Positions 2,068 to 50,866 of a stretch of DNA of 64,000 nt are shown here, piece by piece. A program made the position numbers and the translations under genes. Positions within the stretch are counted from its first letter, which is position 1. Each line of letters begins with the position of its first letter. Where the stretch lies: IMG/VR virus record IMGVR_UViG_3300030041_000009, positions 1-64,000 of that record, one strand, 5' to 3'. The notes beneath the pieces are model-generated. The model saw only the letters and a list, made by a program, of their open reading frames with translations, had not been told where the DNA came from and ran no database searches.

Positions 2068-2691
2068 ATGAAAATAAAATTTGAAGAATTTATATTAGAA
2101 TCAAAAAATTATAACCTTTATAAAGGAGTAGGTAATTTAAAACAAATTTTACTTGATGGTAAAATAAAATTACTAAAAGGTGAATGGGGTTATCAATGGA
2201 GTTCAGATATGAGAAGAAATTTAGGAATAAAAGATGAAGTTGGCATATCAGTAACTAGAAATTTTTCAACTGCTGTTGGTTATGGTGATGCTGTAATAGA
2301 ATTTGATACTCAAAAATTGAGTGATAAATATAAAATTATTCCAATAATAGAAAATTTAGACTATTATTTGAATTTACCAAAAGAAAAAACTAAAAAATTA
2401 TCAATATCAAAACAACTTAGATTAAAAGAATTTGGTAAAGAATATTGGAACATCAAAACAAATAAAGATGCATTCGATTTTGGTATTGCAGAAGAGATAA
2501 TAGTATCAAATGAAGTTTCAATAAAATATATAAAAAAAGTATATATTATTTATAGTAATAGAGATATAACAAAAAAAATTGAATTGCTAAAATTGAATAA
2601 TATTCCTTACGAAATAATATCAAAAGATGATAAATATTTATCTAACGTTAAATATAGAAAAAATAAGATTAATACTTATTCACAGATGTGA
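2068..2691 (+). CDS. Putative ADP-ribosyltransferase-fold protein with CTS-like N-terminus
   Basis: MKIKFEEFILE leader; LYKG...ISVTR...AEE spacing resembles ART strands; TTAATATATAAATA upstream. Confidence 0.4.
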   Translation: MKIKFEEFILESKNYNLYKGVGNLKQILLDGKIKLLKGEWGYQWSSDMRRNLGIKDEVGISVTRNFSTAVGYGDAVIEFDTQKLSDKYKIIPIIENLDYYLNLPKEKTKKLSISKQLRLKEFGKEYWNIKTNKDAFDFGIAEEIIVSNEVSIKYIKKVYIIYSNRDITKKIELLKLNNIPYEIISKDDKYLSNVKYRKNKINTYSQM

Positions 2692-2866
2692 TATTATTAT
2701 CTTTAAATTCTATTTCTAAATTATTTGAGAATATTTCTACAACCTCATCATCTTTCATATAAACATAATCTTCACTTGAAGGCAGCCAACCATTTAAAGA
2801 TTCATTTAATCTACAAGATTTTTTTAATCTTAATTGTAAAATTTCGTCCAATTCTTTAAATTTCAT
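2669..2866 (-). CDS. Hypothetical protein
   Basis: 65 aa ORF with TATCTTTG upstream. Confidence 0.5.
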   Translation of the reverse strand: MKFKELDEILQLRLKKSCRLNESLNGWLPSSEDYVYMKDDEVVEIFSNNLEIEFKDNNITSVNKY

Positions 2867-3135
2867 ATCATTTATATTTATATAAGTTTATAAATACAAA
2901 GATACTACATTATTAATCATATGTCAATAATATAAAGTATATTTTCAATTATTTATATATTTTTAACTTATTATCATAATTTGCTGATTATAAGTACATT
3001 AAAATAAAAATAAACTAATTATTTAATTTTTACTATATAACAATGAGAATAATTTAATTTTAGTAATAAAGAATTACTATATAATAACATAACTAATAAT
3101 TATAAATCAAATTAGATAACCTAATTTTATAATTA

Positions 3136-3242
3136 ATTGATGAATTAATCCGCTGATTTTCTTACTGTAAATCCTATCTTATAAGCGGAATTTATTACCA
3201 TTTGGATATATTTATTTTTATCCTATTTACTGATTCATCAAT
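3136..3242 (+). ncRNA. Candidate structured 5' leader (three-way junction)
   Basis: Pairings 3136-3145/3233-3242 (10 bp), TCCGCT/AGCGGA and GGATA/TATCC. Confidence 0.3.
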
Positions 3243-3261
3243 AAAAAAACAATTTAAAGAC

Positions 3262-3732
3262 ATGAGAAAAATTTTACTAGGCATAATAATGCTATTCGCT
3301 TTTAGTGTATATTCAAATACTCAAAACATTACAACAAGATTTATTGATAAATATAATGCATTAACTATATCATTAAGCAACGAATATAAAATCCCTGCTA
3401 GCGTAATTCTTTCAATTTCAATATGGGAAAGTGGTTCTGGAACAAGTAAATTGAGTAGAACTAAACATAATTATTTTGGAGTTAAACAAGGAAAACATTA
3501 TAGAAGTTATGAAAATGATTCTATATCATTTAGGCATTTTTGTGAGTTTACTTCAAAAAGAAAATATTATTCTAAATTAATAAATAATAATGTTACAGAT
3601 TATAATATATGGGTACATAACATTCAAAGAGGTGGATATTCGCAAACAAAAAATTGGGGTAAACATATCGTTGACATGATTAAAATATACAATTTAAATA
3701 AAATTGATAATCAATATGTTTTTATTGATTAA
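3262..3732 (+). CDS. GH73 glucosaminidase (FlgJ-like peptidoglycan hydrolase) with signal peptide
   Basis: IPASVILSISIWESGSG, HNYFGVK, GGYSQ; hydrophobic N-terminus MRKILLGIIMLFAF. Confidence 0.85.
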   Translation: MRKILLGIIMLFAFSVYSNTQNITTRFIDKYNALTISLSNEYKIPASVILSISIWESGSGTSKLSRTKHNYFGVKQGKHYRSYENDSISFRHFCEFTSKRKYYSKLINNNVTDYNIWVHNIQRGGYSQTKNWGKHIVDMIKIYNLNKIDNQYVFID

Positions 3733-3889
3733 TTTGAAAATTATTTAATTTATTGAGTTTTTCAATTCTATCATCTTTCAATTTTTTTCTTTCTGCTTCT
3801 CTATCATATTTATATGATAGTTTTGCGTTTGAAAAACTTGGATCTGCTACTAAATCATAAGTAAATAGTTTATTTAAAATTATTTTCAA
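3722..3889 (-). CDS. 55 aa mini-protein: prohead-protease-like motif plus RxxKLxxL tag
   Basis: Own translation (TTG start): MKIILNKLFTYDLVADPSFSNAKLSYKYDREAERKKLKDDRIEKLNKLNNFQINQ. Confidence 0.6.
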   Translation of the reverse strand: MKIILNKLFTYDLVADPSFSNAKLSYKYDREAERKKLKDDRIEKLNKLNNFQINQ

Positions 3890-8728: not shown

Positions 8729-9388
8729 ATGAGTAGAATTAATAAATTTGATGAGTTTGTAAATGAGTATAATTATAAATTTGATGATTCAGAATTTTAT
8801 GATTCAGAATTTGATGACCCTGAATTCTATGACCCTGATTATGATGACTCTGTATTTGATGACCCAACAATGGGTGGTTTAAGTATTGATACTTTACAAA
8901 TTGCCGCAGATAAATATAAAACAAAAGAAGAATTTATTAAAAATGATCCAAGAGCTTATGATATTGCTCTTAAAAGTAATTTATTAGATTACTTATTCAA
9001 TAAACAATCTAAACAAGTGCCAAAAGGATATTGGACAGAAGAAAACCTTCAAAAAGAAGCTGATAAATATGAATTACGAAATGATTTCAAAGATAATAAT
9101 GCTTCAGCATATAATATTGCTTGTGATAAAGACATATTAGATAAATTGTTTAACGATCATGAGAATCAAGGATATGCGGAAAAACATAATCCTAATAAAG
9201 TTTTTACGAAAAAACAATTACAAAATATAGTAAATAAATATAAAACACGAAGAGAATTTCAAAAAAATGATTCAGAAGCATATTCTAATGCTGTTAGAAA
9301 TAGTTTACTAGATGAATTGTTCAAAGATAAACCAAACCAAGGATATAAAGGAAATCAAAGACAAAATAATAAAAATGACATCAGATGA
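8729..9388 (+). CDS. CTS-like leader, acidic repeats and three HEG-type helical repeats; no nuclease domain
   Basis: MSRINKFDEFVNE; (D)DSEFY repeats; WTEENLQKEADKY repeats like those in 14449-15747. Confidence 0.7.
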   Translation: MSRINKFDEFVNEYNYKFDDSEFYDSEFDDPEFYDPDYDDSVFDDPTMGGLSIDTLQIAADKYKTKEEFIKNDPRAYDIALKSNLLDYLFNKQSKQVPKGYWTEENLQKEADKYELRNDFKDNNASAYNIACDKDILDKLFNDHENQGYAEKHNPNKVFTKKQLQNIVNKYKTRREFQKNDSEAYSNAVRNSLLDELFKDKPNQGYKGNQRQNNKNDIR

Positions 9389-9522: not shown

Positions 9523-10455
9523 TTATTCATATTTTTGTTTAAAAATGAATTTTTTATGAATATAAAGAAGTAAATCTTTTATATTAATTGTATCTGATTT
9601 GTTATTTTTAAATTCATTTATAGATAAAATATCATCCAAAACTTTATATCCTTCTATTATATATTCATCAGATTTAGTAATAAAATATTTTTTCCAATTT
9701 TCAAAAAATATAAATATATCATTTTTATCTGCACATAAATTACCACCAAAATAATTTATAAAAATATTTACTTTATCTATAATATCTTGCTCATTAATTA
9801 ATTTATTATAATCAAATGATTTTAAAATATTAAAAGATTTATACATGTAAGAATCATGATATAACCTATATAATTCTTCTTTAGAACACTTACAATTTAT
9901 AAACATCTCCCATATCATAGTATTTCTAGCTATTAATTCGTGTTCTAATGATAAATAAATTAATTGTAAAAAATCTATAAAATATTTATTGCTTTCATTT
10001 TTAAGTAACTCAGTATAAAATAAAGAATTTGTGAATGATTTCATATCACTTTCTTCATTTATAGTGTAAACATCATAGATATGTCTTATTTCATGACTTA
10101 TAACTGAACATAATTTATCTACATTTAAATTTATATCATCAATTATAATTGGTATTATTGTTCTATCTTTTCCTGTTACTAAATCATTTATATTTACATT
10201 TGAATAGTAAATAATATCTTTATCCTCATATCTTATTTCAGAATTCAATTTGTTAAATTTAACATCTAATTCTATGATCAAATTACAAAATTCTAATGAA
10301 TTTAAATCTATATTTTTTTTAAATGATTTCGTTTGATTGCCTATAATTTGCCTTATTTCATTAAATAACTTTTTTAATTCATCTGGAATTTCTTTATTGA
10401 ATGATTCATATGTTTTTATGTATTTATTCCATAAATTTTTATTTAATATTTTCAT
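9523..10455 (-). CDS. HExxH (gluzincin-like) metallopeptidase, paralogue 1
   Basis: SHEIRH...YLSLEHELIAR. Confidence 0.7.
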   Translation of the reverse strand: MKILNKNLWNKYIKTYESFNKEIPDELKKLFNEIRQIIGNQTKSFKKNIDLNSLEFCNLIIELDVKFNKLNSEIRYEDKDIIYYSNVNINDLVTGKDRTIIPIIIDDINLNVDKLCSVISHEIRHIYDVYTINEESDMKSFTNSLFYTELLKNESNKYFIDFLQLIYLSLEHELIARNTMIWEMFINCKCSKEELYRLYHDSYMYKSFNILKSFDYNKLINEQDIIDKVNIFINYFGGNLCADKNDIFIFFENWKKYFITKSDEYIIEGYKVLDDILSINEFKNNKSDTINIKDLLLYIHKKFIFKQKYE

Positions 10456-10537
10456 ATAAAGTTTTTATTTATATATAAAAAGATAATAAATCTAATATTA
10501 ATTTTTAATATATAAACGAAATAAAATTTTTAAAATT

Positions 10538-11452
10538 ATGAAATATGTAAAAACATTTGAATTATATCGTGACTATGATATAGATTCTGTTGGTAATCTT
10601 GCTGTTGGTAATCTTGGTGGCTATCCTAATAATAAAAAACAATTATTAGCTTATATAGAAGCTGGCGGCGATATTGATGTTATAGATAAAAATGGAAACA
10701 CTCCTTTAATTAGATCTGTTACAAATAGCAAGAGTGAACTGACAAATATTTTAATTAAAAGTGGAGCAGATTTAAATATTCAAAATAATAATGGAGAAAC
10801 AGCATTAATGAAAGCAACAAAAAATAGAGATGTCATGAGATACATTAGTTTATTGATAGATGCTGGTGCAGATTGGAATATAGAAAAATATGACAAATTT
10901 TTATCATCTGTAGAAAATCCTATCTCTTATAGAGACAAATTATTAGCTAATATTGATTTTTTTGAGATGTTAACACCAAAATATCAAGAATTAACAAAAG
11001 AAAAATATCCAGAAAAATATAACTATTATTTAAGTAAAAAAGAAAGTTCAAATTCAAATTCAAATTCAAATTCACAGAATAATAAAGGAGATACAGCATT
11101 AATTTATGCAGTGAAAGATAGAAACATTAAACGTGTAGAATCTTTAATAAAATCTGGTGCAAATTTGAATATACAGAATAATAAAGGTGAAACAGCATTA
11201 ATTATTGCTGCTCGTTATCTAAATATGAATATAATTTATAAATTGATAGAAGCTGGATCAGATTGGAATATAACTAAATATAAAGATAATACTATTCTTT
11301 CATTTAATTCTATTAATGGTGGTAAACCTTATACGCCGAGAGGTAAATTTTATGAAGAAAAAGATTTTTTTGAAATATTATCACCAAAATATCAAGAAAT
11401 ATTAAAAGAGAAATATCCAGAAAAATATGCTAAATATTTGGCAAAAAAATAA
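10538..11452 (+). CDS. Ankyrin-repeat protein, internally duplicated, CTS-like leader
   Basis: GNTPLI/GETALM/GDTALI/GETALI repeats; duplicated DFFExLxPKYQExxKEKYPEKY; (AATTCA)n linker. Confidence 0.85.
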   Translation: MKYVKTFELYRDYDIDSVGNLAVGNLGGYPNNKKQLLAYIEAGGDIDVIDKNGNTPLIRSVTNSKSELTNILIKSGADLNIQNNNGETALMKATKNRDVMRYISLLIDAGADWNIEKYDKFLSSVENPISYRDKLLANIDFFEMLTPKYQELTKEKYPEKYNYYLSKKESSNSNSNSNSQNNKGDTALIYAVKDRNIKRVESLIKSGANLNIQNNKGETALIIAARYLNMNIIYKLIEAGSDWNITKYKDNTILSFNSINGGKPYTPRGKFYEEKDFFEILSPKYQEILKEKYPEKYAKYLAKK

Positions 11453-12273: not shown

Positions 12274-13116
12274 TTATTTTTTAAAATTATTAAAATCAGA
12301 TATATATTTATTATAATCAATAACTTTTGATTTATTATATGTATTTGAAACATAAGTCTCAAAAATTTCCCAGTCTTTTTCTATTTCATTCAAAATTCTT
12401 TCAGAATTTTTTAAAAAAACATCTGATTTTAATTTAAATATTTTAAACCAGAAATTTAGCCAAGTTTCAATACTATTTGAAGTTATTGTTTTAACATCGT
12501 TTTTAATAAGTATATCATTAAAATCATCAACTTCTTTTTGTTTTAATTGTGAAACAAGAATACTCATTTTTATATTTTTTATATTATCATATAATTTATA
12601 TGTTTCCCAATCTTTTAATCTTAATATAGCATCATCTTTTGAACATCTACCTTCACTTTTAATATAAATATAAGTTTGAGCAACATTAGCATTAACTTCA
12701 TTGTCCAATGTTTTATAAAAAATATCAGTAATAAATTCCATTGCATTAGACATAGAATAATTTTTAAATTTTAATAAAGATGTTTTTATTTTATTATATT
12801 TTGGATAGTCCTTATCTCCAATACCTAAAATTTCTATAACATGAGTTAGCTCATGCGATATATTTTCCTTAACTCTATTTTCATTACCATTTGTTGGTAT
12901 TCCAATATTAACTATAATATTATTAGGTTTAATAATTTTAATGTTTGAGTAATAACTATTTATATTGTTAAAAATTATTGTAATATCTCTATATCCAATA
13001 TCATCACGTCCAAATTTTAATATGTGAGATGAATATGAATTATTAATAAATAATTTCCATATATTGTTTACTTCGTTCTTTATTATATCTGATATACCTT
13101 TACCCTCATTTAACAT
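12274..13116 (-). CDS. HExxH metallopeptidase, paralogue 2
   Basis: LNEGKGIS leader; SHELTH...YKTLDNEVNAN. Confidence 0.7.
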   Translation of the reverse strand: MLNEGKGISDIIKNEVNNIWKLFINNSYSSHILKFGRDDIGYRDITIIFNNINSYYSNIKIIKPNNIIVNIGIPTNGNENRVKENISHELTHVIEILGIGDKDYPKYNKIKTSLLKFKNYSMSNAMEFITDIFYKTLDNEVNANVAQTYIYIKSEGRCSKDDAILRLKDWETYKLYDNIKNIKMSILVSQLKQKEVDDFNDILIKNDVKTITSNSIETWLNFWFKIFKLKSDVFLKNSERILNEIEKDWEIFETYVSNTYNKSKVIDYNKYISDFNNFKK

Positions 13117-13236: not shown

Positions 13237-13500
13237 TTATATCATTTCATATGTTTTTTGATACATATGTTCAATTTTATTAAGTTCTAATATATCATAA
13301 ATATCATCAGTTTCCATAGATATAAATGAAGTATCATCTTCATTTAATAATGATAATAATTTTTCAAATTTTATTTTGAAAAAATCACGAGTTTTTTCAT
13401 TAACATCTAAGACATCCCAATAAAAATCCCAAGTATCATTAGTTTTAACTAATGCAGAACAACAAAATTCAAATTCTTTTTTTAATTCTTTTTTATTCAT
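13237..13500 (-). CDS. Hypothetical protein (possible immunity partner of 13497-13958)
   Basis: Acidic 87 aa ORF overlapping the upstream stop. Confidence 0.5.
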   Translation of the reverse strand: MNKKELKKEFEFCCSALVKTNDTWDFYWDVLDVNEKTRDFFKIKFEKLLSLLNEDDTSFISMETDDIYDILELNKIEHMYQKTYEMI

Positions 13501-13958
13501 ATTTTTGTTTTTAATTCTATTATATTTTTTACATCAATAGTTTTTTGACCTGGTAATATTGTTATTATATTAATATTCAAATTATTAGAAATATTAACAA
13601 TTATAGTAAAATTATATTCTGAAAACCATAATGAGTATTTTCCATTATTCTTAATATAATCATAATTATTAATAAATAATTCATCTAATCCTTTACTAAT
13701 TAATGTATTTAATTCTGTTATATTTTTTAACGAAGTTCTTTCTTTAAATCTTTTTATTAAATCATGCTTAATTGTGTGATTCCAATTTATATTCAACCTA
13801 ATCTTTTTATTATCTATTCTTTTAGAGATAGTTTTATTTTTTATAAAATTATCTGTATTAATAATTTCTTGATCACTAAAAGTGACTCCAGTACCTTTAA
13901 TTATAGATATATCTGATAATCTTGCTTCATTAAATAATTTAAAATTTAATATCCTCAA
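13497..13958 (-). CDS. CTS-like leader plus possible BECR/RelE-like RNase fold
   Basis: MRILNFKLFNE; HDLIKRFKER...IITIL pattern. Confidence 0.35.
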   Translation of the reverse strand: MRILNFKLFNEARLSDISIIKGTGVTFSDQEIINTDNFIKNKTISKRIDNKKIRLNINWNHTIKHDLIKRFKERTSLKNITELNTLISKGLDELFINNYDYIKNNGKYSLWFSEYNFTIIVNISNNLNINIITILPGQKTIDVKNIIELKTKI

Positions 13959-18230: not shown

Positions 18231-18327
18231 AATTAATATATTAATTACTTTTTATTATTATTCAAATGTTATGCCAAACCAAAAATAATGTCAATTTGTC
18301 ATATAATATGACACAATGACATCATAA

Positions 18328-18510: not shown

Positions 18511-18570
18511 ATTTTTATAATTTTGATGCAAAGATAATACATTTTTAGATATTTACCAAATTTTATAATG

Positions 18571-26864: not shown

Positions 26865-28258
26865 TTATTTTATTGTTTTGTATTCTATATATTTTTTATA
26901 AAAAATGTCGTGATATATACTATTAAAATTTTTAGCAGATTTCATGTTTTGGGTTAAATGATTATCTGTTTCAGTTCTCAAATCATTTAACATTTTTATG
27001 CCTTGTTCATTCTTTCCATTTTTAAAATAATTATTAGCAGTTTCATCTAATAGTTTAGATTGTATATTAAGATAATTAACTAATTCAGTTTCAGCATTTT
27101 TATCTTGTGTTATTCCGTTTTCTGAATATCCAGCATAATCATCATCATTATTTTCGTTGTTTTCATTAACGAACATATCAAAAATCTTTAAGTGATTCAT
27201 ACATTTATTTTTTTTTTATATACTATATATATTATTTTTTATTTGTTTTTTCTTCACCGCAAATATCAATTTTAATTTTTTCTAAATCTTTAGTTGCACC
27301 TTTTCCTTTTGTCCAATATTTGTTTACATTATCAAAAAATTCACTTTTCTTTTCATCTGATAATTTAGCAGGAGATTTAACATCATAACAATCAAGTATG
27401 AATTTAAAATATTCTCTATATTCTATTTGTAAATCTGATAATTTTTCATTTAATGATAAACTTTCATTATATTGTTTGAAATTTTTAATTTTATTCATTG
27501 ATATTATTAGTTTTTTATATATATATTAAATAATAAAAATCATTTTTTATTATTTTAATGTAAATTGTCTTTTAATTAAATTTCCTTTTAATTTAACAGA
27601 TTTTTTAGTACCATCTTCAAAATAAATTATAATCTCAAAATTATCAAAAATTAAACCAAAGTCTTGATATTCAATCATATCATAACTACTTGATAGAATG
27701 ACAACATTTTTATTATGATAAAATCCTTTTCTTCCTATATAATATTCTTTAAACATTTATAAATTTAATTTATCTTGGATTAATTCTATTCGCAACTTGC
27801 ATCATAGAATTATATCTTGCTTTTTCAAACATTTCTAATGATACATAATCAGTATTAGTGAAATCTACTGTTTCATTTAAACTTTGACGTTCTTGCGCTT
27901 GTTTAACTTCATTTAGTCTTTCATCATGAAGTTTTTGCATAACTTCATTTAATTTATTTTCTTTTGCTTCTTGTTTAACTTCATTAATATTAAATCCATT
28001 TACTTTTGTTTCAATGTTAAATTCATTAATGTTAAAGTCTTGTGAGTATTCTTGACGTCTTACTTCATTTATATTTTGTTGACTATAATTACTATAATTA
28101 GTATTATAATTAGTATAATCAGGAGTTTCTTTTAACATTTGTCCATTAAAAGAATTATCATTACCTCTTAATTGCTCGTATGTGTAATCTGTTGTTTCTA
28201 TTTTTTTAGCATTTACTTGTTTGAATAAATCTAAATACGATTGATCATAATATTCCAT
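26865..28258 (-). CDS. Four late-type hypothetical ORFs (26865, 27232, 27550, 27770)
   Basis: CTS-like leaders MNHLKIFDMFVNE and MNKIKNFKQYNE; TAATATATA motifs upstream. Confidence 0.6.
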
Positions 28259-28508
28259 AAAAATTTATTATTTTTTGTTATATATTAATAATTAAGTATA
28301 TATTAATATTTACATATTGAATTTATTTGATTTATTTTTAATTTTTTGAATTTCTATTGCTTCTTTCGTAGCTAATATTAATTCATCTTCTGCTCCAGTA
28401 AAAATTTCACCTTCCCTTTTTAATCCGTTTTTTGGTTCAGATCCCATATATCTGGTAAACATAATAAGATTATTAGGTACATTATCATACTTAACATCAT
28501 AATAGCAT

Positions 28509-30001
28509 ATAGTTTCTAATTTCGATGAAAAACAATGAAATCAGTTTAAAATTAAGTTAATAATTTTTGGGGTAACTACAAACCCCTCTATTCCGTCAAT
28601 AAATATATTCGGAAATGCTTTTCTTAAAATGTTATAACTACCATTTACATCTGCGTTAATTATCACATTTGAATTTTTTATTTTATATAAACCTCTACTT
28701 TGACGATATCCACTGAATATTTTTTCGGTTTTGTCTCCGTAAACTGGTATTAAATCTAAATTCAAAAATGAAGATTTGCTAGTATAACTTTCTTCTTGTA
28801 ATATAACTCTTATTCCTTCTTTTTCGCACTTATACGATAACATCGATATAAATCTACTATGTGGAATCTGTATGAAATTCTGGTTGTTCTGTTTTGACAT
28901 GTTGCATTCTTGTTTCCAACCATCATTTTTACCAATAACTAATTTTGATATGTTATTGATAATTAATTCTTTAACTATTTGATTACTTGCTTTGTGTAGG
29001 TAATCATCTACTTTATTGTTTCGTTTATTTGTTAACTTCCTTATTCCTTTACTTGACTTCTTTTTATTAGTGATTTCAAGAACTGATTTCATTTCTGCTA
29101 AACGTTTATTGTAATATTGATTTGTAGATTTAAGTGGTCTACCATTAAAAATTAATGGTTGAAATCCTTTAATACTGGTCGTTAATGTCGCTAAATTATT
29201 TACACCTAAATCAATTGAAGCGTATCGTTTGTTGTCTCTGACTTGTTTCTTTTCATTATAGGTATAACACACTTCAATCACGTATTGATCAAGCCTTGGT
29301 ATTATCCGAACGCAATCTATTGAATTAATATCAGTTAACTTGGTATAGAATTCTATTTTAGTACCTGATAACTTGATTTTGTTTGTTTTCTTGAATACTT
29401 TTCTTGATATCGCTTGATAATTATATGAAATAATAAATCTTCCTTTAATCTTATGAAGAAATCCTGGTTGCTCTGGATAACTTTTATACTTTGATTTATT
29501 TTTACCATAATCTTTACATGAATTAAAGAAACTTTTGTAATTTCGTTGAACCTGAATGATAGTTCCAGTCGCAACTTTCATTGGTAATCTCTGAAAGCAC
29601 TCTTCAGACTTCATTACTTGATATAACTTATTTAAAGGATTATAATCAGTTGTTTCTAAACCTTGTCTGATTAAATAAACTGATCGATTATAGATGTTCT
29701 TTGATTTAAAACATAATTCATCACACTCTTTATAATTTGAATGTGATTTAGTAATTATATGTCTTTCCGTCAATTTCATGTATTAATACCTAATTTTAAT
29801 GTATATATTAATAAAAATATATTATTTATTTATATTTTATAGAAATTAAATCATTAAAAGTTTAAATTAATTTATTATTTTTATTTAACTATTTATTTTA
29901 ATTTATATGATAAATATTTACTATCTTAGTTTATTAAATCATTTGATGAAATAATTTCATTGAAATTCATTATTTTTCATTCATTTATATGAAGATTTTG
30001 A
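28509..30001 (-). mobile_element. Non-autonomous TnpB-only IS200/IS605/IS607-type element, about 1.49 kb
   Basis: Ends inferred from in-frame reconstitution at a shared TAT; TTCATTRTTTTTCAT inverted motifs near both ends; no tnpA. Confidence 0.75.
28541..29779 (-). CDS. tnpB: RNA-guided endonuclease TnpB
   Basis: SKNIYN, IDLGVNNL (RuvC-I), YLHKAS, EESYTSK, NADVNGSYNI (RuvC-III). Confidence 0.92.
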   Translation of the reverse strand: MKLTERHIITKSHSNYKECDELCFKSKNIYNRSVYLIRQGLETTDYNPLNKLYQVMKSEECFQRLPMKVATGTIIQVQRNYKSFFNSCKDYGKNKSKYKSYPEQPGFLHKIKGRFIISYNYQAISRKVFKKTNKIKLSGTKIEFYTKLTDINSIDCVRIIPRLDQYVIEVCYTYNEKKQVRDNKRYASIDLGVNNLATLTTSIKGFQPLIFNGRPLKSTNQYYNKRLAEMKSVLEITNKKKSSKGIRKLTNKRNNKVDDYLHKASNQIVKELIINNISKLVIGKNDGWKQECNMSKQNNQNFIQIPHSRFISMLSYKCEKEGIRVILQEESYTSKSSFLNLDLIPVYGDKTEKIFSGYRQSRGLYKIKNSNVIINADVNGSYNILRKAFPNIFIDGIEGFVVTPKIINLILN

Positions 30002-30212
30002 ATACCTTTATCATATTCAAAGTCAGCAATGATACCTACATTATTATCTAAAAAATCAACAATAGATTCATATTTATTTTGTCTATCTTTGATGTCAATT
30101 ATAACATAATCACCAATTTTAAATTTAGTATTTATATTTTCAAAAAATCTAATATATTTCATTTATAACTTATATTTATTTATATATATTAAAAAAATAA
30201 AGTTATTTTTGT

Positions 30213-31150: not shown

Positions 31151-31876
31151 TTAATTTTTTTTATATTTATTTAATATAGATAATATTTGTTTATTATATT
31201 TATTAGAATAAAAATAATCATTTTTATTTACAATATCAAATACATTAAGTCCATCATCATTAGGTTCTGGTTTAAAATTATAGTCTTTAGCATATAAATT
31301 TGCACCTTTCTGTAAAAGTTCATCAATAATTTTCAATCTCATATCAACATTATGATTTTCACCAGAAAGTATATGATCTTTTCTTTTTAAATTTTCGACT
31401 GCTAGTATTAATGGAGTAGATCCATCTCTACTTATAGAATTAATATCAATATTAGGCTGTTCTAATAATAGTTCAAATACCTTAAATCCTTCTTCATTTA
31501 AACGTTTCTCATACACAATACTAGATAGTGGGCTAAAATTTGCATGTCCTTTTAAATTAATATCAGCTCCTTTATCAATTAAATACTTACATACATCATA
31601 ATTCTGATATGAACTTGATAAATTAAGTATATTATCACCAGCCAATTCAACATTTATTATTTCAGGATGCGCATCAATAAGACTTATAACATTATTTGTT
31701 TCTTTATTCATAAGATATGTTCTACACTCATAATAATAACTATGAATATTTTTTTCTAAATCTTTTTTCTGTTTTCTGCCGTCACTGTATTTCGTGAATG
31801 TTGATGTATAATCATCACCATAAAAATGTTCATCATTTGTAAATCCTTCAAATGATTTTAAATGTTTATTTTTCAT
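31151..31876 (-). CDS. Ankyrin-repeat protein with CTS-like leader
   Basis: MKNKHLKSFEGF; LIDKGADIN, GSTPLILAV, LLQKGANL. Confidence 0.8.
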   Translation of the reverse strand: MKNKHLKSFEGFTNDEHFYGDDYTSTFTKYSDGRKQKKDLEKNIHSYYYECRTYLMNKETNNVISLIDAHPEIINVELAGDNILNLSSSYQNYDVCKYLIDKGADINLKGHANFSPLSSIVYEKRLNEEGFKVFELLLEQPNIDINSISRDGSTPLILAVENLKRKDHILSGENHNVDMRLKIIDELLQKGANLYAKDYNFKPEPNDDGLNVFDIVNKNDYFYSNKYNKQILSILNKYKKN

Positions 31877-40498: not shown

Positions 40499-40565
40499 TT
40501 ACATTTGTTTGTTTAATTAATAATGTACAAAGATAATAAAAATAATATGTAGTTCATTACATTTT

Positions 40566-40793
40566 TTATTTATTTAATTTTTTTTTAATGTTTTTTGAAT
40601 TAGATATTTTTTCAAGATTTTTTAATTTTTTAATTCTTTCTTCCTTTTTCTTTCTTTTGTTTTCGTATTTTTTTAATATTTCTGCAGTTTTAAAATTAAT
40701 AATTATAAAATCTCCTGATCCTGAAAGTTTTTTATTATGTATCAGATTAGATGCATCTAATAATTTTTGATAAAGTTCATTATTAATCGACAT
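40566..40793 (-). CDS. 75 aa mini-protein: major-capsid-like segment plus tag
   Basis: KLLDASNLIHNKKLSGSGDFIIINFKTAEIL...EERIKKLKNL. Confidence 0.6.
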   Translation of the reverse strand: MSINNELYQKLLDASNLIHNKKLSGSGDFIIINFKTAEILKKYENKRKKKEERIKKLKNLEKISNSKNIKKKLNK

Positions 40794-41265
40794 TTAATTT
40801 TTTTAATTTTTTGCTTCTTATATATTTAACAATATTAGAATTTTTATTAATTATATCATTACTAATATAACGAATACAATTTTCTTCTACTTCACAATAA
40901 TTATTGTAACAATTTTTTAATTTACATGCATCATATTTATCATAAGAATCCCATTCAATTCTTTTATTCGGACAATTTTCATCAATAAAATTAATAAATT
41001 TTTTCTTATTTTCAATATTAATATATCTATTCTTTGATGTTTTTATATCTGTTTTTATTGTGAAAGTTTTTAATGCACTTGATGATATAGTTAATTCTAT
41101 TTCAGCCTCATTATCTCTTATGGTGTATCCCGTTATTGAATCATAATCAATTATTGTGAATTCATGATAACAACTAAATTTACAATAACTTAAAGTTATT
41201 TCAGTTAATGATACAATTATATCTCTTACTTTAAATTCTGGATTTAAATAAATTGGAATTACCAT
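40783..41265 (-). CDS. Cys-containing hypothetical protein with tag
   Basis: Ends YIRSKKLKKL. Confidence 0.6.
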   Translation of the reverse strand: MVIPIYLNPEFKVRDIIVSLTEITLSYCKFSCYHEFTIIDYDSITGYTIRDNEAEIELTISSSALKTFTIKTDIKTSKNRYINIENKKKFINFIDENCPNKRIEWDSYDKYDACKLKNCYNNYCEVEENCIRYISNDIINKNSNIVKYIRSKKLKKLNVD

Positions 41266-41435: not shown

Positions 41436-42293
41436 TTAATAATATCTATATTTTTCATTCATATTTCCTTGATCCTTAATAACTTCATTAATTATAGATA
41501 ATAACTTTTTTTTATTTTTAATACATTTATTTTTAAATATATTTTCCCATTTTTTAAAATAATCTATTAATGGTAAATTTGAATCTATAAAATCTAAATT
41601 GTAATTATTTTTAATAATTTGTTCATTTAAATGATTAATTAAAACTATTAACGCTGGCTCTGATATTTTTTCTAACATATAATTATAAAATTTTTCAGCA
41701 TTAAAACTATCCAATTCTTCATATTTTTTCCATGATTCACATTCTTTAATTTTTTCTAATAAAATATTTTTATCTATGCTATTAAATTTCATTAAAAAAT
41801 GATACGCTTCTGAAACTCTAGCGTTTAATTCATTATCCAAAGATAAATAAATAAAATATGTAAAATCATTTAAAGGTGTCTCGATTTTGTTAAAATTTGT
41901 TATAATTTTTTGTAAATTAACATGAGTAGGTAAATCTCTTTGATTCTTAACCAAATTATAAAATTCTAAAACATGAGTCAATTCATGAGATATTTTACTT
42001 TTTATGATGTAATCATCAGTTCCAATAGGAACAAAAAAGTATAAATTTATATTTTTTAATATATTATTTGAAAAAGTATAATTTATAGGATCAAATTTAG
42101 CATAACAATCTAATCTTTTTTCAAAATTAATAGTCAATTTAATATTATATAAAGGAAATAAAATATCTTTTAAATCTAAAAAAATAATCTTATCTTCATA
42201 GTCTAAAAAATTAGTATAAATAATATCAGAATATGTTTTAATAATGTTAGAAATACCATTACCTTCATTGATAAAATTTAAATACTTTTTCAT
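41436..42293 (-). CDS. HExxH metallopeptidase, paralogue 3
   Basis: MKKYLNFINEGNGIS; SHELTH...YLSLDNELNAR. Confidence 0.7.
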   Translation of the reverse strand: MKKYLNFINEGNGISNIIKTYSDIIYTNFLDYEDKIIFLDLKDILFPLYNIKLTINFEKRLDCYAKFDPINYTFSNNILKNINLYFFVPIGTDDYIIKSKISHELTHVLEFYNLVKNQRDLPTHVNLQKIITNFNKIETPLNDFTYFIYLSLDNELNARVSEAYHFLMKFNSIDKNILLEKIKECESWKKYEELDSFNAEKFYNYMLEKISEPALIVLINHLNEQIIKNNYNLDFIDSNLPLIDYFKKWENIFKNKCIKNKKKLLSIINEVIKDQGNMNEKYRYY

Positions 42294-43264
42294 ATTGGTA
42301 TATTAAAATTTTCATTTAATAAATTTTTAAAAAATATAGGATCATATAAATACATTCTATTAAAATCTTTATGAAATATTGCAGATGGTATCGATGAGAA
42401 CTCTAAATTACCCTCATTAATCCTATTATCAACACTTGATATTTTACTTTTTATATATTTTAACCTAATATCAAATAATTCTTTAAGATCAATTAAAAAT
42501 TTATCATTATTAGTTTCTTTCCATATAGATTTATTTAATTTCTTAATATATTTCTTATTTTTTGAATAATAATAAATACTCTGATATATTTTATCTTTTA
42601 ATAAATTTAATTCAATTTCTTCTATATTACTAAGCTTTTTTATATTAAATTTTTCAATATCTTTAATATTATCAAATATTTTATTGTATTTTTTACCAAT
42701 CTTACTAAAATAATAATATTGATGTATTTGAGCATCGATTTCATGACTTAAAGTTTTATATAATAATTCAATTATATTATTAATATAATCTGATTTAAAA
42801 TTGTTTCTAAATTGACTCAAAATAACTCCGATAGACCAAGAAGATGACCTAAATTTATTATTTTTAGAAATATTGTAATATTGAAAAATGTGTAAACATT
42901 CATGTAAAATGACAGAATCTATATAATCATTAAAATATATCTCATCTTTATCAGAAATATAAATATCTAAAACTATTTCAATATTAGATAAAATATCATT
43001 ACTCATTTTAGAGTTATTAAATCTAGCAACAGAGTTGCAAACATTTTCTTTATATTTATATAAATTAAATATTACTTTAATATTATCTAATTTTAAGTCA
43101 TTTTCAGATAATTCATAAGTAAACTCATTACTTAAATTAATATTATTAAAATTAATTAATATATTATGCAAATCTTTTGATATAGTCTCCTGTAAAATTT
43201 CACAAGAATCAGATATCGATTTTCTTTCTAATAAATATGTGTTGTAATTGTTTAAATAATCCAT
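42290..43264 (-). CDS. HExxH metallopeptidase, paralogue 4 (start MDYLNNY)
   Basis: LHECLH...YKTLSHEIDAQ; the longer track ORF extends into the tRNA. Confidence 0.7.
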   Translation of the reverse strand: MDYLNNYNTYLLERKSISDSCEILQETISKDLHNILINFNNINLSNEFTYELSENDLKLDNIKVIFNLYKYKENVCNSVARFNNSKMSNDILSNIEIVLDIYISDKDEIYFNDYIDSVILHECLHIFQYYNISKNNKFRSSSWSIGVILSQFRNNFKSDYINNIIELLYKTLSHEIDAQIHQYYYFSKIGKKYNKIFDNIKDIEKFNIKKLSNIEEIELNLLKDKIYQSIYYYSKNKKYIKKLNKSIWKETNNDKFLIDLKELFDIRLKYIKSKISSVDNRINEGNLEFSSIPSAIFHKDFNRMYLYDPIFFKNLLNENFNIPI

Positions 43265-43379: not shown

Positions 43380-43706
43380 TTATAAATTAAATTTTTTAAT
43401 ATCATATTTTATTTGTATTTCTGGATCTAATTTTACATCATTTAAAACCTTAGCAGTATCTAAATAAATTTTTTTATCTAAATCACATACATTAAAATTC
43501 TCAATTAATGTATCAATATCAAAAATATCTTCAATTTCATAATCTATATCATTGTCTTTATATTCATTGCAAATATGATTTATAGTAAAATTATTTCTGC
43601 TTAATTTATCATCAAATGAATACATATCATTTATACCACAATCTGATATAGTACAAAGATAAATTATTGTTCCAGTATTATTTTCAAATAATTTTAAATG
43701 CTTCAT
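43380..43706 (-). CDS. Hypothetical protein with CTS-like leader and KKFNL tail
   Basis: MKHLKLFE...DIKKFNL. Confidence 0.6.
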   Translation of the reverse strand: MKHLKLFENNTGTIIYLCTISDCGINDMYSFDDKLSRNNFTINHICNEYKDNDIDYEIEDIFDIDTLIENFNVCDLDKKIYLDTAKVLNDVKLDPEIQIKYDIKKFNL

Positions 43707-45371: not shown

Positions 45372-46856
45372 TCATAAAGGAGTTCCCTCTAATTTTTTAA
45401 GCTCATTTTGTAATTTATCAAGTTCTTCATGTTTTTCCATCATCACGTTTTTCCACTTTTTTCTATCAGAATATACTTCTCTCATTACACTACTAACAAC
45501 TCCTTCCTCATTCTTAAATACTGATCCATTTAAAGTTATGATATCATCAGGCTCAATTGTTAATTGATGTCCATTAAATATGGAATAATCTTTACCTTTT
45601 ACTTTTTGACCTTTATATGAATCTGCAGATATGTTAAATTCTCTCATAGTAGTAGGATACAAGGAACTAAAGTCAAAACAGCATGTCCATTCTGCCATAC
45701 CTCTTACAGGTTCTTTAACCCATCCTCCTTTTATAGATTCAGTTTCAGTATCTCCGTATTCACTATCTTCATTTCTAACAAGAACAATATTTTTTTGATC
45801 TCTTAATTTTTCTCTTAAAATTCCTTCTGTTAATGCAAGAGTTGAAATTGCATCTTTAATCTTAATTTTACCCAATACAGCCATGCCATAAAGTATGTCT
45901 ACATATTTCATTTTTTTATGTATCTGTTGAACTAAGCAACTATCTACAGCATTATAGAATACAAATTTCTTATAGTCCTCTTTATGCAATTTTTTTAAAT
46001 CTCCATCGTAATTAATTTTCTTAATTTCTTTTCCTAGTAATTTTTCAGAAGCGAAATCTAAAGATAAACTTTCCTTTACTTTAACTGATTGATCCCATTT
46101 TTTAAATAATTCCATATAATCAACTATAACCCTATGCGCTGGCATTTCTGCGTAACTTGGATTAATAGCATTAGGAGGATTAAATGGTTTATTAAGTTTT
46201 TTTGTGAATGAGGCAACCTCAGGTTCAAGTCCAATTCTTCTTGCTCTTGCAACTAAATATGTCCAGTCATAATTAATGAAATTCCAACCAGTTATTACTG
46301 GCATTTTAGGAACTAATTTGTTAAAAAAACTATGAAGCATATCATATTCAGTTTTGTACTGAACATATTTAAATTTATAATTTGTTCCAAATTTTTGAAA
46401 ATGAGTATTGATATCATTACCAATTGATTCAATTTGTGCAGCATCTAAAAACTGAGTTCCAATTACCAACACTTTATCTTTATTTACTATTGATATTGTT
46501 TGTATCTCACCCTCAGCAAGTTGTGGTTGTGGTTTACCAGTATTAAGAATCTCGTTCTCAATATCAACGAAGAATATATCTGGTTCTGCATATGAATATA
46601 TTTCATCTCGTTCTTCTTTATCAAAACTATCTATGAAATCATAAATGGAATACCGATTTGGGTATTTTGTATAAATCTCTTTAACATTTTCTCCTGACCA
46701 TGTGACAAATCTACCACTTTTTTCTTTATCATCATCAGTAGTTTTTATAAATTTTGTTGGGCGACTCCAATTTTTATATTTTAGTTTGATCTGACCAGAA
46801 CTATCTATATATGAGATAATTAGGTTATTATTTTTATATTCAGTATCTACAATCAT
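45372..46856 (-). CDS. Family B DNA polymerase, N-terminal subunit only (exonuclease plus motif A)
   Basis: VDIE (ExoI), GWNFINYD (ExoII), YNAVD (ExoIII), GGWV, DFSSLYP; motifs B and C absent. Confidence 0.9.
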   Translation of the reverse strand: MIVDTEYKNNNLIISYIDSSGQIKLKYKNWSRPTKFIKTTDDDKEKSGRFVTWSGENVKEIYTKYPNRYSIYDFIDSFDKEERDEIYSYAEPDIFFVDIENEILNTGKPQPQLAEGEIQTISIVNKDKVLVIGTQFLDAAQIESIGNDINTHFQKFGTNYKFKYVQYKTEYDMLHSFFNKLVPKMPVITGWNFINYDWTYLVARARRIGLEPEVASFTKKLNKPFNPPNAINPSYAEMPAHRVIVDYMELFKKWDQSVKVKESLSLDFASEKLLGKEIKKINYDGDLKKLHKEDYKKFVFYNAVDSCLVQQIHKKMKYVDILYGMAVLGKIKIKDAISTLALTEGILREKLRDQKNIVLVRNEDSEYGDTETESIKGGWVKEPVRGMAEWTCCFDFSSLYPTTMREFNISADSYKGQKVKGKDYSIFNGHQLTIEPDDIITLNGSVFKNEEGVVSSVMREVYSDRKKWKNVMMEKHEELDKLQNELKKLEGTPL

Positions 46857-48492: not shown

Positions 48493-48549
48493 TTATAAAA
48501 TTGAATCTTTTAATATTAATATATAAAAGTATAAAAATTTAAATTAAAA

Positions 48550-48936
48550 ATGGAAGATAAAGATAAAAAACTAGAATTTATCGGTAAAGTGGTTAAAATG
48601 CCAAAAAACACTAAAGCAAAAAATGCATACAATTTTTTAGAAAACATAAAAGTTTCAAAAAGTAAATTGTGGTATATTCTTATTGAAAAAGATGAGAATA
48701 AGTTACAATGTATTAAATATAATAATAAAATGGGTGTTAATTTAACTTTATTAATAGAAGGAATGAAGAATTATTATGAAAAGGATGAGAACATTCAGAA
48801 ATATATTAATGAGCTTAAAATTGAAGGTAATGATAAATTTAGTATAATTACAGCTATTCCTGATGTAGAAATTTTACCAGGTAAAAAAATGATAACGTTT
48901 TTAACAGAGAATTTAATACAGTTATTATATAAATAA
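48550..48936 (+). CDS. Hypothetical protein, paralogue of 34277-34774
   Basis: Shared motifs. Confidence 0.65.
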   Translation: MEDKDKKLEFIGKVVKMPKNTKAKNAYNFLENIKVSKSKLWYILIEKDENKLQCIKYNNKMGVNLTLLIEGMKNYYEKDENIQKYINELKIEGNDKFSIITAIPDVEILPGKKMITFLTENLIQLLYK

Positions 48937-48948
48937 AAAATTAAATAT

Positions 48949-49893
48949 ATGATAAATAATTACGATGAATATATATTAGAAAATAGAGGAATATCAAATA
49001 TTATAAAACAATATACAGATATAATATTTATAGAAATTAAAAAAAATATAGAAGATAATATTTCAGATGAAATAATATTAGATTTAGATGCTCAGAATGA
49101 TTTTATTTTAAAAAATATGTTAATTGATTATAAATTATCTAATAGAAATTATGGATTATTTGATTCATCTCATATTATATTTAAAGATGATATATTATAT
49201 AATGTTATAATTAGAATTGAAATAGATCAAAATAAATTCAACGACGTAAAAATAAAGGAAATAATAACTCACGAATTGACTCACATTTTAGAATATTTTA
49301 GAATAAAACAAAATGATGTAAAATTAAATTTAAATATTAACGTTGATCCGAACTATATTTCAGTTCGTAAATCTATAAACTATATTAATTTTGATAATGA
49401 GTGGAATAGTTTTAAAACTCTGATTTATTTATCTTTAGATACTGAATATAACGCAAGGATTGCACAACTTTATCAATTTTTAATAGATTTTAATTCAAAA
49501 GATAGTGATTTTTTAATGAATAAATTTTTAAATAGTGAAACTTATAAATGTTACAGTTATTTAGATGAATTTAATGCAGAACTATTTTTGATAAAATTAA
49601 AAATGAATATTGGAGAAAATACATTAATATCGGAAATTAATAGATTGAATCAGGAATTAATAAATAGTGGTGTAAACAAACTTAATGGTTATAAATTTAT
49701 AAAAATTGTTGATATAGATAATGTTGAAGCATATTTAAACAATTGGAAAAATTTATTTAAGAATAAAAATAAAAAACACATAAAAAAAATAAATTTGATT
49801 ATCAAAGAAGTTATATCCGATGTTAAAGATAATAAAAAATGGTGTGATAATTTTGAAATTGATGAGAGTTATAAAAATAGATTATTAGAATAA
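48949..49893 (+). CDS. HExxH metallopeptidase, paralogue 5
   Basis: MINNYDEYILENRGIS; THELTH...YLSLDTEYNAR. Confidence 0.7.
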   Translation: MINNYDEYILENRGISNIIKQYTDIIFIEIKKNIEDNISDEIILDLDAQNDFILKNMLIDYKLSNRNYGLFDSSHIIFKDDILYNVIIRIEIDQNKFNDVKIKEIITHELTHILEYFRIKQNDVKLNLNINVDPNYISVRKSINYINFDNEWNSFKTLIYLSLDTEYNARIAQLYQFLIDFNSKDSDFLMNKFLNSETYKCYSYLDEFNAELFLIKLKMNIGENTLISEINRLNQELINSGVNKLNGYKFIKIVDIDNVEAYLNNWKNLFKNKNKKHIKKINLIIKEVISDVKDNKKWCDNFEIDESYKNRLLE

Positions 49894-49933
49894 ATTATAT
49901 AATTAAAAAATAAATTGAATTATAAATAAAATA

Positions 49934-50866
49934 ATGATAATAAAAAATAAAATATTTAATTTAATAGTAGAGAAAGTTGGAATTGAGTTGGATATTAAAG
50001 ATTTAAGTGATCAAATTTATAAATTGATTATAAATGATAAAAAATTATATTATAAATTTGATGGTAAGTTATTTGATGTTAGAATTATGCACATTAATTC
50101 AATACTGATATTTATATCAAACAATGATTCTTCATTTGATGCATCATCTTCAACATTAACTGAAAAAGGATTTGATATTATATTGAATATAAATAAGAAT
50201 GATATAGAAACTAAAGTTATACATCACGAATTAAATCATGCTTTAAAATTTTATATGATAGGTAAAGAAAAATATATAGATAAAACTCGTGAATTAAAAA
50301 GTTATAAAATGAGTAGAACTTTTATTAAAAACCCAGATATTGAAGATTTTATAGATTTGGTTTATTATTCTGATTTAGAAGAAGTTGATTCTTTCATTAG
50401 TGAAGCATATTATGAAATTATGGAAAATTTTAAAAAAATTGGTAGAGTTATAACTAATATAGAATTTAATAAATATTTTAATTCATTTCACAAAGATACT
50501 TACATATATAAAATGTCTGATGTATTATATAATTATAATTTTAAAATATTAAAAAAATATAATTCTGATATGCTGGTTGTATTTTTTAATGTTTTAAATG
50601 ATAAAAAAAATTTATTAATAATATCAAAAAAAAGTGGAAAATTTAAAAAATTTTTATTGAATATTATAAATTTATTTAATGATAAATATTATATGAGTTG
50701 GTATTATAGTAGAATAGATAAAAACATTAAAATTGAGAATTTAGATGAGATATTAGAAATATATGATAAAAGATTTAAAAGTGCATCAAAAACTATTAAA
50801 AATAAATTATCTAAATTATATAGTTTAATCTTGGAAGAATTAAAGAATGAAAATTTAATAAAATAA
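49934..50866 (+). CDS. HExxH metallopeptidase, paralogue 6
   Basis: HHELNH...YYSDLEEVDSF. Confidence 0.65.
   Translation: MIIKNKIFNLIVEKVGIELDIKDLSDQIYKLIINDKKLYYKFDGKLFDVRIMHINSILIFISNNDSSFDASSSTLTEKGFDIILNINKNDIETKVIHHELNHALKFYMIGKEKYIDKTRELKSYKMSRTFIKNPDIEDFIDLVYYSDLEEVDSFISEAYYEIMENFKKIGRVITNIEFNKYFNSFHKDTYIYKMSDVLYNYNFKILKKYNSDMLVVFFNVLNDKKNLLIISKKSGKFKKFLLNIINLFNDKYYMSWYYSRIDKNIKIENLDEILEIYDKRFKSASKTIKNKLSKLYSLILEELKNENLIK

What the first reader, a model, noticed from the sequence alone, without database searches (positions are those of the whole stretch)
2068..50866. About 20 genes with a T4 capsid-targeting-like leader: predicted injected-protein arsenal
Seen leaders: MKIKFEEFILE, MSRINKFDEFVNE, MKYVKTFE, MRILNFKLFNE, MNHLKIFDMFVNE, MNKIKNFKQYNE, MKYIRFFE, MKNKHLKSFE, MKKYLNFINE, MKHLKLFE, MINNYDEYILE and others, most after TT[AT]ATATATA. 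Established: T4 internal proteins use the CTS MKTYQEFIAE, which gp21 cleaves after Glu. Inference: these are packaged in the head and injected. Cargo includes metallopeptidases, ankyrin proteins, ART- and RNase-like folds and DNA-binding repeats, so they may act at time zero against host defences.
Basis: partly seen in the sequence, partly recalled or inferred. Interest (0 to 1): 0.75.

Follow-up and report, generated by a model that had tools for sequence, protein, structure and literature searches.

The report
Capsid-targeting-like leaders in a megaphage
A fragment of a huge peat bacteriophage carries dozens of small genes whose proteins start with a short tag closely resembling the signal phage T4 uses to load proteins into its head, so this virus may deliver an unusually large set of proteins into its host together with its DNA.

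Summary
The leaders are real and far from chance, but the window shows only the edge of the pattern. I count 16 leader genes in 2068-50866. The whole 256-kb record, a fragment of a huge phage estimated 36% complete, has 83 tagged genes out of 443.

There are two leader forms:
- **Type B**, [FY]xx[FY][ILV]xE within about 13 residues of the start. It has the T4 capsid-targeting determinants.
- **Type A**, MK[YH][ILV]Kx[FY]E. It usually comes with a conserved C-terminal helix ending NKFN[LI], in tandem arrays with ATGA overlaps.

The two forms replace each other among orthologues and are fused in a relative (MKYIKEYEEFILE).

Related contigs with the same gene junctions encode a T4-type portal, a gp23-type capsid protein and an S77/S80 prohead protease. 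That protease protein carries 12-14 tandem repeats (YSEYIAE) matching the type-B pattern. Leader genes lie almost only behind the AT-rich promoter that also precedes tail-fibre and head genes (62 to 1).

Confirmed cargo: ankyrin, LRR, HExxH proteins and an ADP-ribosyltransferase fold.

Loading into the head is the best explanation. It is inferred, not shown. Cleavage, presence in virions and injection are untested, and this contig lacks the head module.

The parts
2068..2691 (+). Type-B leader MKIKFEEFILE followed by an ADP-ribosyltransferase-fold domain (DarT/Tpt1-like)
   Evidence: Pattern match. AF2 model with pLDDT 74, residues 1-12 below 50. Foldseek hits to DarT at E 2e-4 and Tpt1 at 2.7e-4. 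Orthologues carry either a type-B or a type-A-like leader.
8729..9388 (+). Type-B leader MSRINKFDEFVNE; cargo unknown (phrog_20046)
   Evidence: The atlas gives weak leads to homing-endonuclease-associated DNA-binding repeats. P1 motif 30 nt upstream.
9523..10455 (-). Type-A core KYIKTYE displaced to residues 11-17; HExxH (HEIRH) protein
   Evidence: Weak metallopeptidase leads from the atlas. P1 motif 23 nt upstream.
10538..11452 (+). Type-A leader MKYVKTFE followed by ankyrin repeats
   Evidence: Pfam Ank_2 at 5.8e-25. P1 motif 32 nt upstream.
12274..13116 (-). HExxH family member with a minimal leader, MLNE
   Evidence: Alignment A2: the leader Glu and the HExxH motif are invariant. P1 motif 28 nt upstream.
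13497..13958 (-). TTG-start gene with leader MRILNFKLFNE
   Evidence: P1-like motif 24 nt upstream.
26865..27200 (-). Leader MNHLKIFDMFVNE, which fits both type A and type B
   Evidence: A metatranscriptome holds 40% of the sampled words of 26865-27530.
27232..27498 (-). Type-A-like leader MNKIKNFKQYNE
   Evidence: P1 motif 30 nt upstream.
28310..28462 (-). Small ORF with the C-terminal tag only (ends NKFNM)
29977..30162 (-). Type-A leader MKYIRFFE followed by a short SH3-like 'IGDYV' domain
   Evidence: P1 motif 29 nt upstream. Same family as alignment A1.
31151..31876 (-). Shifted type-A leader MKNKHLKSFE followed by ankyrin repeats
   Evidence: Pfam Ank at 2e-10.
41436..42293 (-). Type-B leader MKKYLNFINE, with its key residues at the same positions as in the T4 CTS; HExxH protein
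42290..43264 (-). Type-B leader MDYLNNYNTYLLE; HExxH protein
43380..43706 (-). Type-A leader MKHLKLFE plus the C-terminal tag KKFNL; first gene of a P1 unit that continues into 42290 and 41436
   Evidence: P1 motif 24 nt upstream.
48949..49893 (+). Type-B leader MINNYDEYILE; HExxH protein
49934..50866 (+). Degenerate leader MIIKNKIFNLIVE; HExxH protein
   Evidence: Weak Pfam hit to Tox-MPTase4 at 0.0085, below the family cut-off.
10505..10514 (+). Example of the P1 promoter-like motif TTAATATATA (34 copies in the window)
   Evidence: The motif peaks 25-35 nt before start codons and also precedes the tail-spike and tail-fibre genes.

Best explanation
The N-terminal leaders are prohead-core (capsid) targeting propeptides of the T4 kind.

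The proposed sequence is this. Leader genes are transcribed from the late-type promoter together with the virion genes. The 8-13-residue disordered leader, with its aromatic pair, co-assembles with the scaffold part of the prohead protease protein, which is itself a string of the same motif. The S77/S80 protease then cuts after the leader Glu, at least in the type-B form [ILV]-x-E. The cargo stays in the head and probably leaves with the DNA.

Shown here:
- The motif, its enrichment and its protein-level conservation.
- The T4-type head module in the lineage.
- The scaffold repeats.
- The promoter association.
- Several cargo folds: ankyrin, LRR, SH3-like barrels, HExxH proteins and an ADP-ribosyltransferase fold.

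Inferred: binding to the core, cleavage, packaging, ejection, and any role against host defences.

The C-terminal helix ending NKFN[LI] is a second, lineage-specific tag. Its role is open.
For: 1. The type-B leader has the T4 determinants: two aromatic residues three apart, then [ILV], then Glu two residues on. Several leaders have them at the same positions as in T4: MKKYLNFINE, MKNFIEFINE and MKTYLQYIKE against MKTYQEFIAE (PMC9026906).
2. Positive control. The same pattern and ORF caller on T4 hit 3 of 255 N-termini: ipII, ipIII and gp61.1. Inside T4 proteins the pattern also hits the gp23 maturation site FGSFLTE.
3. Contigs that carry the KFNx-stop/MKYIK junction encode a Portal_T4 portal (213-215 bits), a Gp23-type capsid protein (77-91 bits) and a prohead protease. 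The protease scores Peptidase_S80 27 bits, S77 22.5 bits and PHROG head maturation protease 4e-31. A gp55-like late sigma factor is a weak hit.
4. The leader pattern was fixed. It then hit the 781-793-aa protease protein 13-14 times, in 14-residue repeats. In G014, 22 of 26 motif hits are either N-terminal or in that protein, against 5.2 expected overall.
5. The constraint is on the protein. Synonymous codons vary about as in the rest of the genome. The motif recurs with many synonymous changes in LR756504 (16 copies) and LR756500 (8 copies), with none for the reversed-pattern control.
6. Leaders are disordered add-ons in two AF2 models. They sit on unrelated folds.
7. Types A and B exchange among orthologues and are fused in LR756500.
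8. Transcription units: 62 leader genes sit behind P1 and 1 behind the host-like promoter. Other genes split 124 to 91, Fisher p = 7e-12. P1 precedes tail-spike, tail-fibre and head genes.
Against: - There is no direct evidence of cleavage, packaging or ejection.
- The head module is not on this 256-kb record. The link is at lineage level, through contigs of related but not identical phages.
- The dominant type-A leader has a variable residue, mostly T, K or R, where T4 needs L or I.
- A scoring matrix built from the scaffold repeats alone does not pick out leaders: only 3 of the top 40 hits.
- The tagged proteins number 83 in about a third of the genome. They are on average mildly acidic (median pI 6.3), unlike the basic T4 internal proteins.
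- The C-terminal tag has no T4 counterpart and no enriched cleavage site.
- That P1 is 'late' is inferred only from the genes it precedes.
Confidence: 0.55

Rival explanations
1. The N- and C-terminal tags address the proteins to some other partner or fate inside the infected cell. They could, for example, dock binder modules (ankyrin, LRR, SH3-like) onto a common hub or protease, or set their stability. On this view the proteins are never packaged.
For: - The cargo is rich in protein-binding modules.
- The tag is two-ended, and the C-terminal helix is unlike anything in T4.
- The proteins are mildly acidic.
- The number of tagged genes is very large.
- A second, mutually exclusive C-terminal tag class of 83 genes suggests general sorting by terminal tags.
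Against: - It does not explain why the leader matches the T4 CTS determinants and the repeats in the protease-scaffold protein.
- It does not explain why these genes avoid host-type promoters, which one would expect for takeover factors.
- No PDZ-type reader of C-termini was found.
Confidence: 0.22
2. The conserved gene ends are mainly a nucleic-acid feature. The junction would serve translational coupling in a host without Shine-Dalgarno use, or act as a repeat for recombinational shuffling of cassettes, and the amino-acid motif would be a by-product.
For: - About 35 nt of junction is conserved, with ATGA overlaps.
- The Asn codon before the stop is AAC in 52% of cases, against 8% genome-wide.
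- The last codon always ends in TA.
- A diverged relative shows cassette-sized differences in one array.
Against: - Leaders also occur on stand-alone genes with their own promoter.
- Synonymous variation is normal, and the substitutions seen are conservative: Y/H, I/L/V, F/Y.
- The leader persists in relatives that lack the C-terminal tag and the arrays.
Confidence: 0.12
3. The pattern is a compositional artefact of a 22% GC genome rich in K, N, I, F, Y and E.
For: The amino-acid composition is very skewed.
Against: Controls on internal Met, shuffled sequences and the reversed pattern all give about zero.
Confidence: 0.01

Closest known systems
T4 internal proteins IPI/IPII/IPIII and their capsid targeting sequence
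   Same: - A short N-terminal propeptide with an aromatic pair and [IL]-x-Glu.
- Diverse cargo behind one conserved tag.
- A T4-type portal, capsid protein and prohead protease in the lineage.
- A late-type promoter.
   Different: - Tens to probably more than a hundred tagged genes, against three in T4.
- The main leader form lacks the L/I-X-E site.
- Many tagged proteins carry an extra C-terminal tag.
- The genes sit in tandem arrays with overlapping stop and start codons.
- The cargo is not basic.
- The scaffold is fused to the protease and built of CTS-like repeats.
- The hosts are Bacteroidota.
T4 Alt (packaged ADP-ribosyltransferase)
   Same: The window gene 2068-2691 joins a CTS-like leader to an ART fold. 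Alt is a head protein processed by gp21 at both termini (PMC9026906).
   Different: The fold matches DarT/Tpt1 rather than Alt. The protein is small (207 aa). No C-terminal tag is present in this copy. Neither activity nor packaging has been tested.
phiKZ / 201phi2-1 / SPN3US ejection and inner-body proteins cut by gp175-type (S80) proteases
   Same: Large phages with many head proteins processed after Glu. The protease here scores above the Peptidase_S80 cut-off.
   Different: Those phages have no short shared N-terminal leader, and their cleavage motif is S/A-X-E. They are chimalliviruses with unrelated genomes.
Encapsulin cargo-loading peptides (recalled from memory, not tested)
   Same: A short terminal peptide loads varied cargo into an HK97-fold shell. 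This is a possible analogy for the NKFN[LI] C-terminal tag.
   Different: There is no sequence similarity, and no evidence here that the C-terminal tag binds the capsid protein.

Membership tests
T4-type CTS-tagged internal head proteins | N-terminal propeptide of about 10 residues with targeting aromatics three apart and a processing site [L/I]-x-Glu | tested here: met
   Met for type B: 12 genes, 6 of them in the window. The same pattern recovers T4 ipII and ipIII. Not met in full by type A, whose P3 residue is variable.
T4-type CTS-tagged internal head proteins | A gp21-family prohead protease in the same phage | tested here: inconclusive
   Absent from this 36%-complete record. Present in four related contigs with the same gene junctions and in LR756504, LR756500 and Lak-B1.
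T4-type CTS-tagged internal head proteins | A scaffolding core that the tag can join | tested here: inconclusive
   The protease protein carries 12-14 repeats matching the leader pattern.
T4-type CTS-tagged internal head proteins | Late expression together with head genes | tested here: inconclusive
   Leader genes share the P1 motif with tail and head genes, 62 to 1 against the host-like promoter. There are no timing data. One metatranscriptome holds part of two leader genes.
T4-type CTS-tagged internal head proteins | Leader removed by the protease; mature protein present in virions and ejected | not testable with these tools
   The phage is uncultured and no proteome is available.
ADP-ribosyltransferase fold (gene 2068-2691) | ART fold with conserved Arg / Ser-Thr / acidic motif | tested here: met
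   Foldseek hits to DarT and Tpt1 at probability 1.00 and TM 0.41-0.46. R49, S61, R64, E78 and D80 are invariant in 27 homologues. Assigning these to catalytic roles is my inference.
Zinc metallopeptidase (HExxH) paralogues | HExxH motif plus a match to a peptidase family | tested here: inconclusive
   HExxH is invariant in 5 paralogues and present in a sixth gene. The only Pfam hit is below the cut-off.

The most novel reading that the evidence does not exclude
Megaphages of this clade sort much of their proteome by short terminal tags. One class combines the CTS-like N-terminal leader with a C-terminal helix ending NKFN[LI]; together these would form a two-ended cargo-loading system that fills the head with well over a hundred swappable small proteins held in cassette arrays. 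That would be the largest virion-delivered repertoire known for any phage. A second, mutually exclusive C-terminal tag (RKxKLxKL, another 19% of genes) would mark proteins with a different fate.
Probability: 0.25. Interest if true: 0.9.

Novelty: new variant of a known kind. Interest (0 to 1): 0.72.

Why it matters
Huge phages carry hundreds of small genes of unknown role. If a fifth of them are tagged for loading into the head, much of that dark matter becomes a virion-borne toolkit, and a short sequence tag would predict it directly from metagenomes.

It would also extend the T4 capsid-targeting mechanism to the Lak/Mahaphage clade of Bacteroidota phages. The scaffold built of the same motif suggests how the tag works. 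The tag is also a candidate signal for loading foreign proteins into large capsids.

Tried and rejected
- **Complex prediction.** I did not pursue it further.
- **Head genes on this contig.** PF03420 and PF07068 are absent from the record.
- **N-C strand clasp.** I considered that the N- and C-terminal tags pair with each other. AF2 leaves residues 1-9 disordered, so I rejected this.
- **Polyprotein by frameshift.** I considered frameshifting at AAATTTA. My own reading of the reading frame puts the heptamer in the wrong phase, so I rejected it.
- **PDZ-type reader of the C-terminus.** None was found.
- **C-terminal cleavage site.** [ILV]xE is not enriched near the C-terminal tag: 28% against 25%.
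- **Matrix from scaffold repeats.** It finds only 3 leaders among its top 40 hits. The link between leader and scaffold therefore rests on the degenerate pattern only.
- **Fold of the SH3-like cassette.** Only weak matches to BAH, chromo and KOW-type barrels, with E above 0.04.
- **Literature.** No paper contains the type-A motif, and none links capsid targeting to megaphages.
- **Capsid maturation site.** The peat capsid protein's site could not be aligned to the T4 site.
Full report
**What the sequence is.** The window is the first 64 kb of a 256,033-bp IMG/VR virus record. The record has linear ends, 22% GC, and CheckV puts it at 36% complete. It comes from peat metagenomes. Several contigs of 181-221 kb from other peat samples are identical to it where I compared them, so they are the same population and not independent support. 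Its nearest named relatives are the 462-735-kb 'uncultured phage' genomes LR756500-504 and the Lak phages. These belong to the Mahaphage clade, whose hosts are predicted to be Bacteroidetes (PMC7162821). Two upstream motifs recur. One resembles the Bacteroidota -7 element as I recall it (TAnnTTTG, often TATCTTTGTA). The other is TTWATATATA, which I call P1.

**The observation.** All the quoted leaders are present, and one of them starts with TTG. I count 16 tagged genes in 2068-50866. Type A, MK[YH][ILV]Kx[FY]E, stands at 54 of 443 gene starts in the whole record, against 2 of 1128 internal Met. Type B, [FY]xx[FY][ILV]xE beginning in the first 8 residues, stands at 12 starts (6 in the window), against 1 internal Met and a mean of 0.68 in shuffled N-termini. 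Most type-A genes lie at 80-224 kb, outside the window. Forty-five of them also end in a conserved C-terminal module, a helix of about 20 residues that ends NKFN[LI]. That ending occurs at 66 of 443 C-termini, against 69 hits in 75,378 internal positions. Many sit in tandem arrays where the stop of one gene overlaps the ATG of the next.

**Protein signal or nucleic-acid signal?** Within the leader, synonymous codons vary about as they do genome-wide, and the replacements seen are conservative. A back-translated pattern finds 56 copies in a 330-kb peat relative, 16 in LR756504 and 8 in LR756500, with many synonymous differences. It finds none in LR756501 or Lak-B1, and the reversed-pattern control finds none anywhere. 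The leader is therefore selected as protein. At the C-terminal tag some nucleotide-level bias does exist: AAC codes the Asn in 52% of cases against 8% genome-wide, and the last codon always ends in TA. F/Y exchange and conservation down to 33% identity still argue for a protein motif there too.

**The leader is a detachable add-on.** AF2 models of an SH3-like cassette protein and of the window protein 2068-2691 leave residues 1-9 and 1-12 below pLDDT 50. The tags sit on unrelated cargo. Of 75 tagged proteins, 9 are ankyrin, 3 are LRR and one has an ExoX-like_C match. Six window genes carry HExxH, and the leader Glu is invariant among the five aligned paralogues. Gene 2068-2691 has an ADP-ribosyltransferase fold, with Foldseek matches to DarT and Tpt1 at E around 2e-4. 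Among orthologues of that ART protein the leader is either type B (MKIKFEEFILE, MIKTFENFINE) or type-A-like (MKYLESFKLFE). In LR756500 the two forms are fused, as MKYIKEYEEFILE. Types A and B are therefore variants of one signal.

**Link to T4.** The T4 CTS is MKTYQEFIAE (PMC8442874). Residues 4 and 7 target, residues 8 and 10 govern processing, and gp21 cuts after L/I-X-E (PMC9026906). Type B has exactly these features, in several genes at the same positions. As a control I ran the same ORF caller and pattern on T4. It hits 3 of 255 N-termini: ipII, ipIII and the hypothetical gp61.1. Internally it also hits the gp23 maturation site FGSFLTE.

**The head module of the lineage.** This record has no gp21 or gp23 match. 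Four peat contigs that carry the same KFNx-stop/MKYIK junction do. They encode a protease 57-61% identical to that of LR756504, a Portal_T4 portal at 213-215 bits and a Gp23-type capsid protein at 77-91 bits. The protease scores above the Peptidase_S80 cut-off and just below the S77 cut-off, and it matches the PHROG 'head maturation protease' at 4e-31. A gp55-like late sigma factor is a weak hit. These contigs belong to related phages, not the same phage: nucleotide identity is 66-84% in the few stretches they share.

**Scaffold repeats.** The protease protein is 781-793 aa long. After its protease domain it has 12-14 tandem 14-residue repeats, YSEY[ILV]AENLDxxIx. I had fixed the type-B pattern, before seeing these repeats, and each repeat matches it. 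In contig G014, 13 of the 26 motif hits lie in this one protein and 9 at protein N-termini, against 5.2 expected overall. The motif thus occurs in two places only: the scaffold-like part of the protease, and the start of cargo proteins. This suggests that a leader is a single copy of the scaffold unit and joins the core by mimicry, and that [ILV]-A-Glu is the protease site. There is a caveat. A scoring matrix trained on the repeats alone does not rank leaders highly, with only 3 of the top 40, so the likeness is at the level of the degenerate pattern. The protease also starts MKPVLIVE, with Glu at position 8 as in type A, and it ends in ...DKLNS, faintly like the C-terminal tag. I treat both resemblances only as leads.

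**Timing.** P1 peaks 25-35 nt before start codons. It precedes the tail-spike and tail-fibre genes on this record and the head genes on the related contigs. When each gene is traced to its nearest upstream promoter motif, tagged genes fall 62 to P1 and 1 to the host-like motif. Other genes fall 124 to 91 (Fisher p = 7e-12). P1 also drives homing-endonuclease-like and TnpB genes, so it is a phage-specific class rather than a strictly virion class. One permafrost metatranscriptome holds 40% of the sampled words of two leader genes. That shows no more than probable transcription.

**What argues against packaging, or remains open.**
- Nothing here shows cleavage, packaging or ejection.
- Type A lacks L or I at P3.
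- There are 83 tagged proteins in about a third of a genome, with a median pI of 6.3. The T4 internal proteins are basic.
- The C-terminal tag is confined to the peat lineage. It has no enriched cleavage site, and no reader domain was found.

**Verdict.** It remains an inference. I rate it a new variant of a known kind: T4-type capsid targeting, greatly expanded, with a two-ended tag, in megaphages.

Noticed in passing
window 17982-23093(-), 24049-25563(+), 39374-41265(-); record-wide: A second terminal tag. 83 of 443 genes (median 87 aa) carry [RK][KR]x[KR][LIM]x[KEQN][LI] ('YRKLKLNKL') ending 4-7 residues before the C-terminus, against 3 hits in 64,746 other residues. None of them overlaps the 83 leader/KFN genes. 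Many have SH3-like 'IGDxVxCI' domains. Their promoter class is mixed. Unexplained.
   Followed up: partly
window 43708-45309(-) and 45372-46856(-): The 533-aa DUF7487 gene is a multi-copy, homing-endonuclease-like mobile gene. Six paralogues at about 45% identity sit among the head genes of related contigs. In the window it directly follows a gene holding only the exonuclease domain and the first part of the polymerase domain of a family-B DNA polymerase.
   Followed up: partly
L159:17146-19491 (G014), L160:13149-15530 (G015), L121:3343-5637 (LR756504): The prohead protease is fused to a long scaffold-like extension with 11-14 tandem 14-residue repeats (YSEYIAENLDxxIx), followed by an acidic, Pro-rich stretch and a conserved C-terminal domain.
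   Followed up: yes
T4 record AF158101 18966-19130(-): T4 gp61.1, an annotated hypothetical protein of 54 aa, starts MKTFKEFIKE. This is a CTS-like N-terminus found by the control scan.
   Followed up: no
gene junctions record-wide, e.g. G000 187044-187690: At the C-terminal tag the Asn codon is AAC in 52% of cases, against 8% genome-wide. The final codon is always TTA, ATA or another xTA, even when the stop is TAA and does not overlap a start.
   Followed up: partly
window 28541-29779(-): An IS605 OrfB/TnpB-like gene (OrfB_IS605 plus the Cas12f1-like TNB domain) lies behind a P1 motif. A similar gene lies next to a cassette array in a relative.
   Followed up: no
window 18612-20006(-), 60138-61919(+), 56244-58715(-), 54178-56208(-): Auxiliary genes: RtcB RNA ligase, a glutamine-dependent NAD synthase-like protein, a group-1 glycosyltransferase, and a protein with three TIG domains behind a P1 motif.
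   Followed up: no
G000 167695-168549(-): A 284-aa protein with weak similarity to the C-terminal half of the lineage's gp23-type capsid protein: 23% identity over 258 aa, E 9e-9. It has no leader.
   Followed up: no
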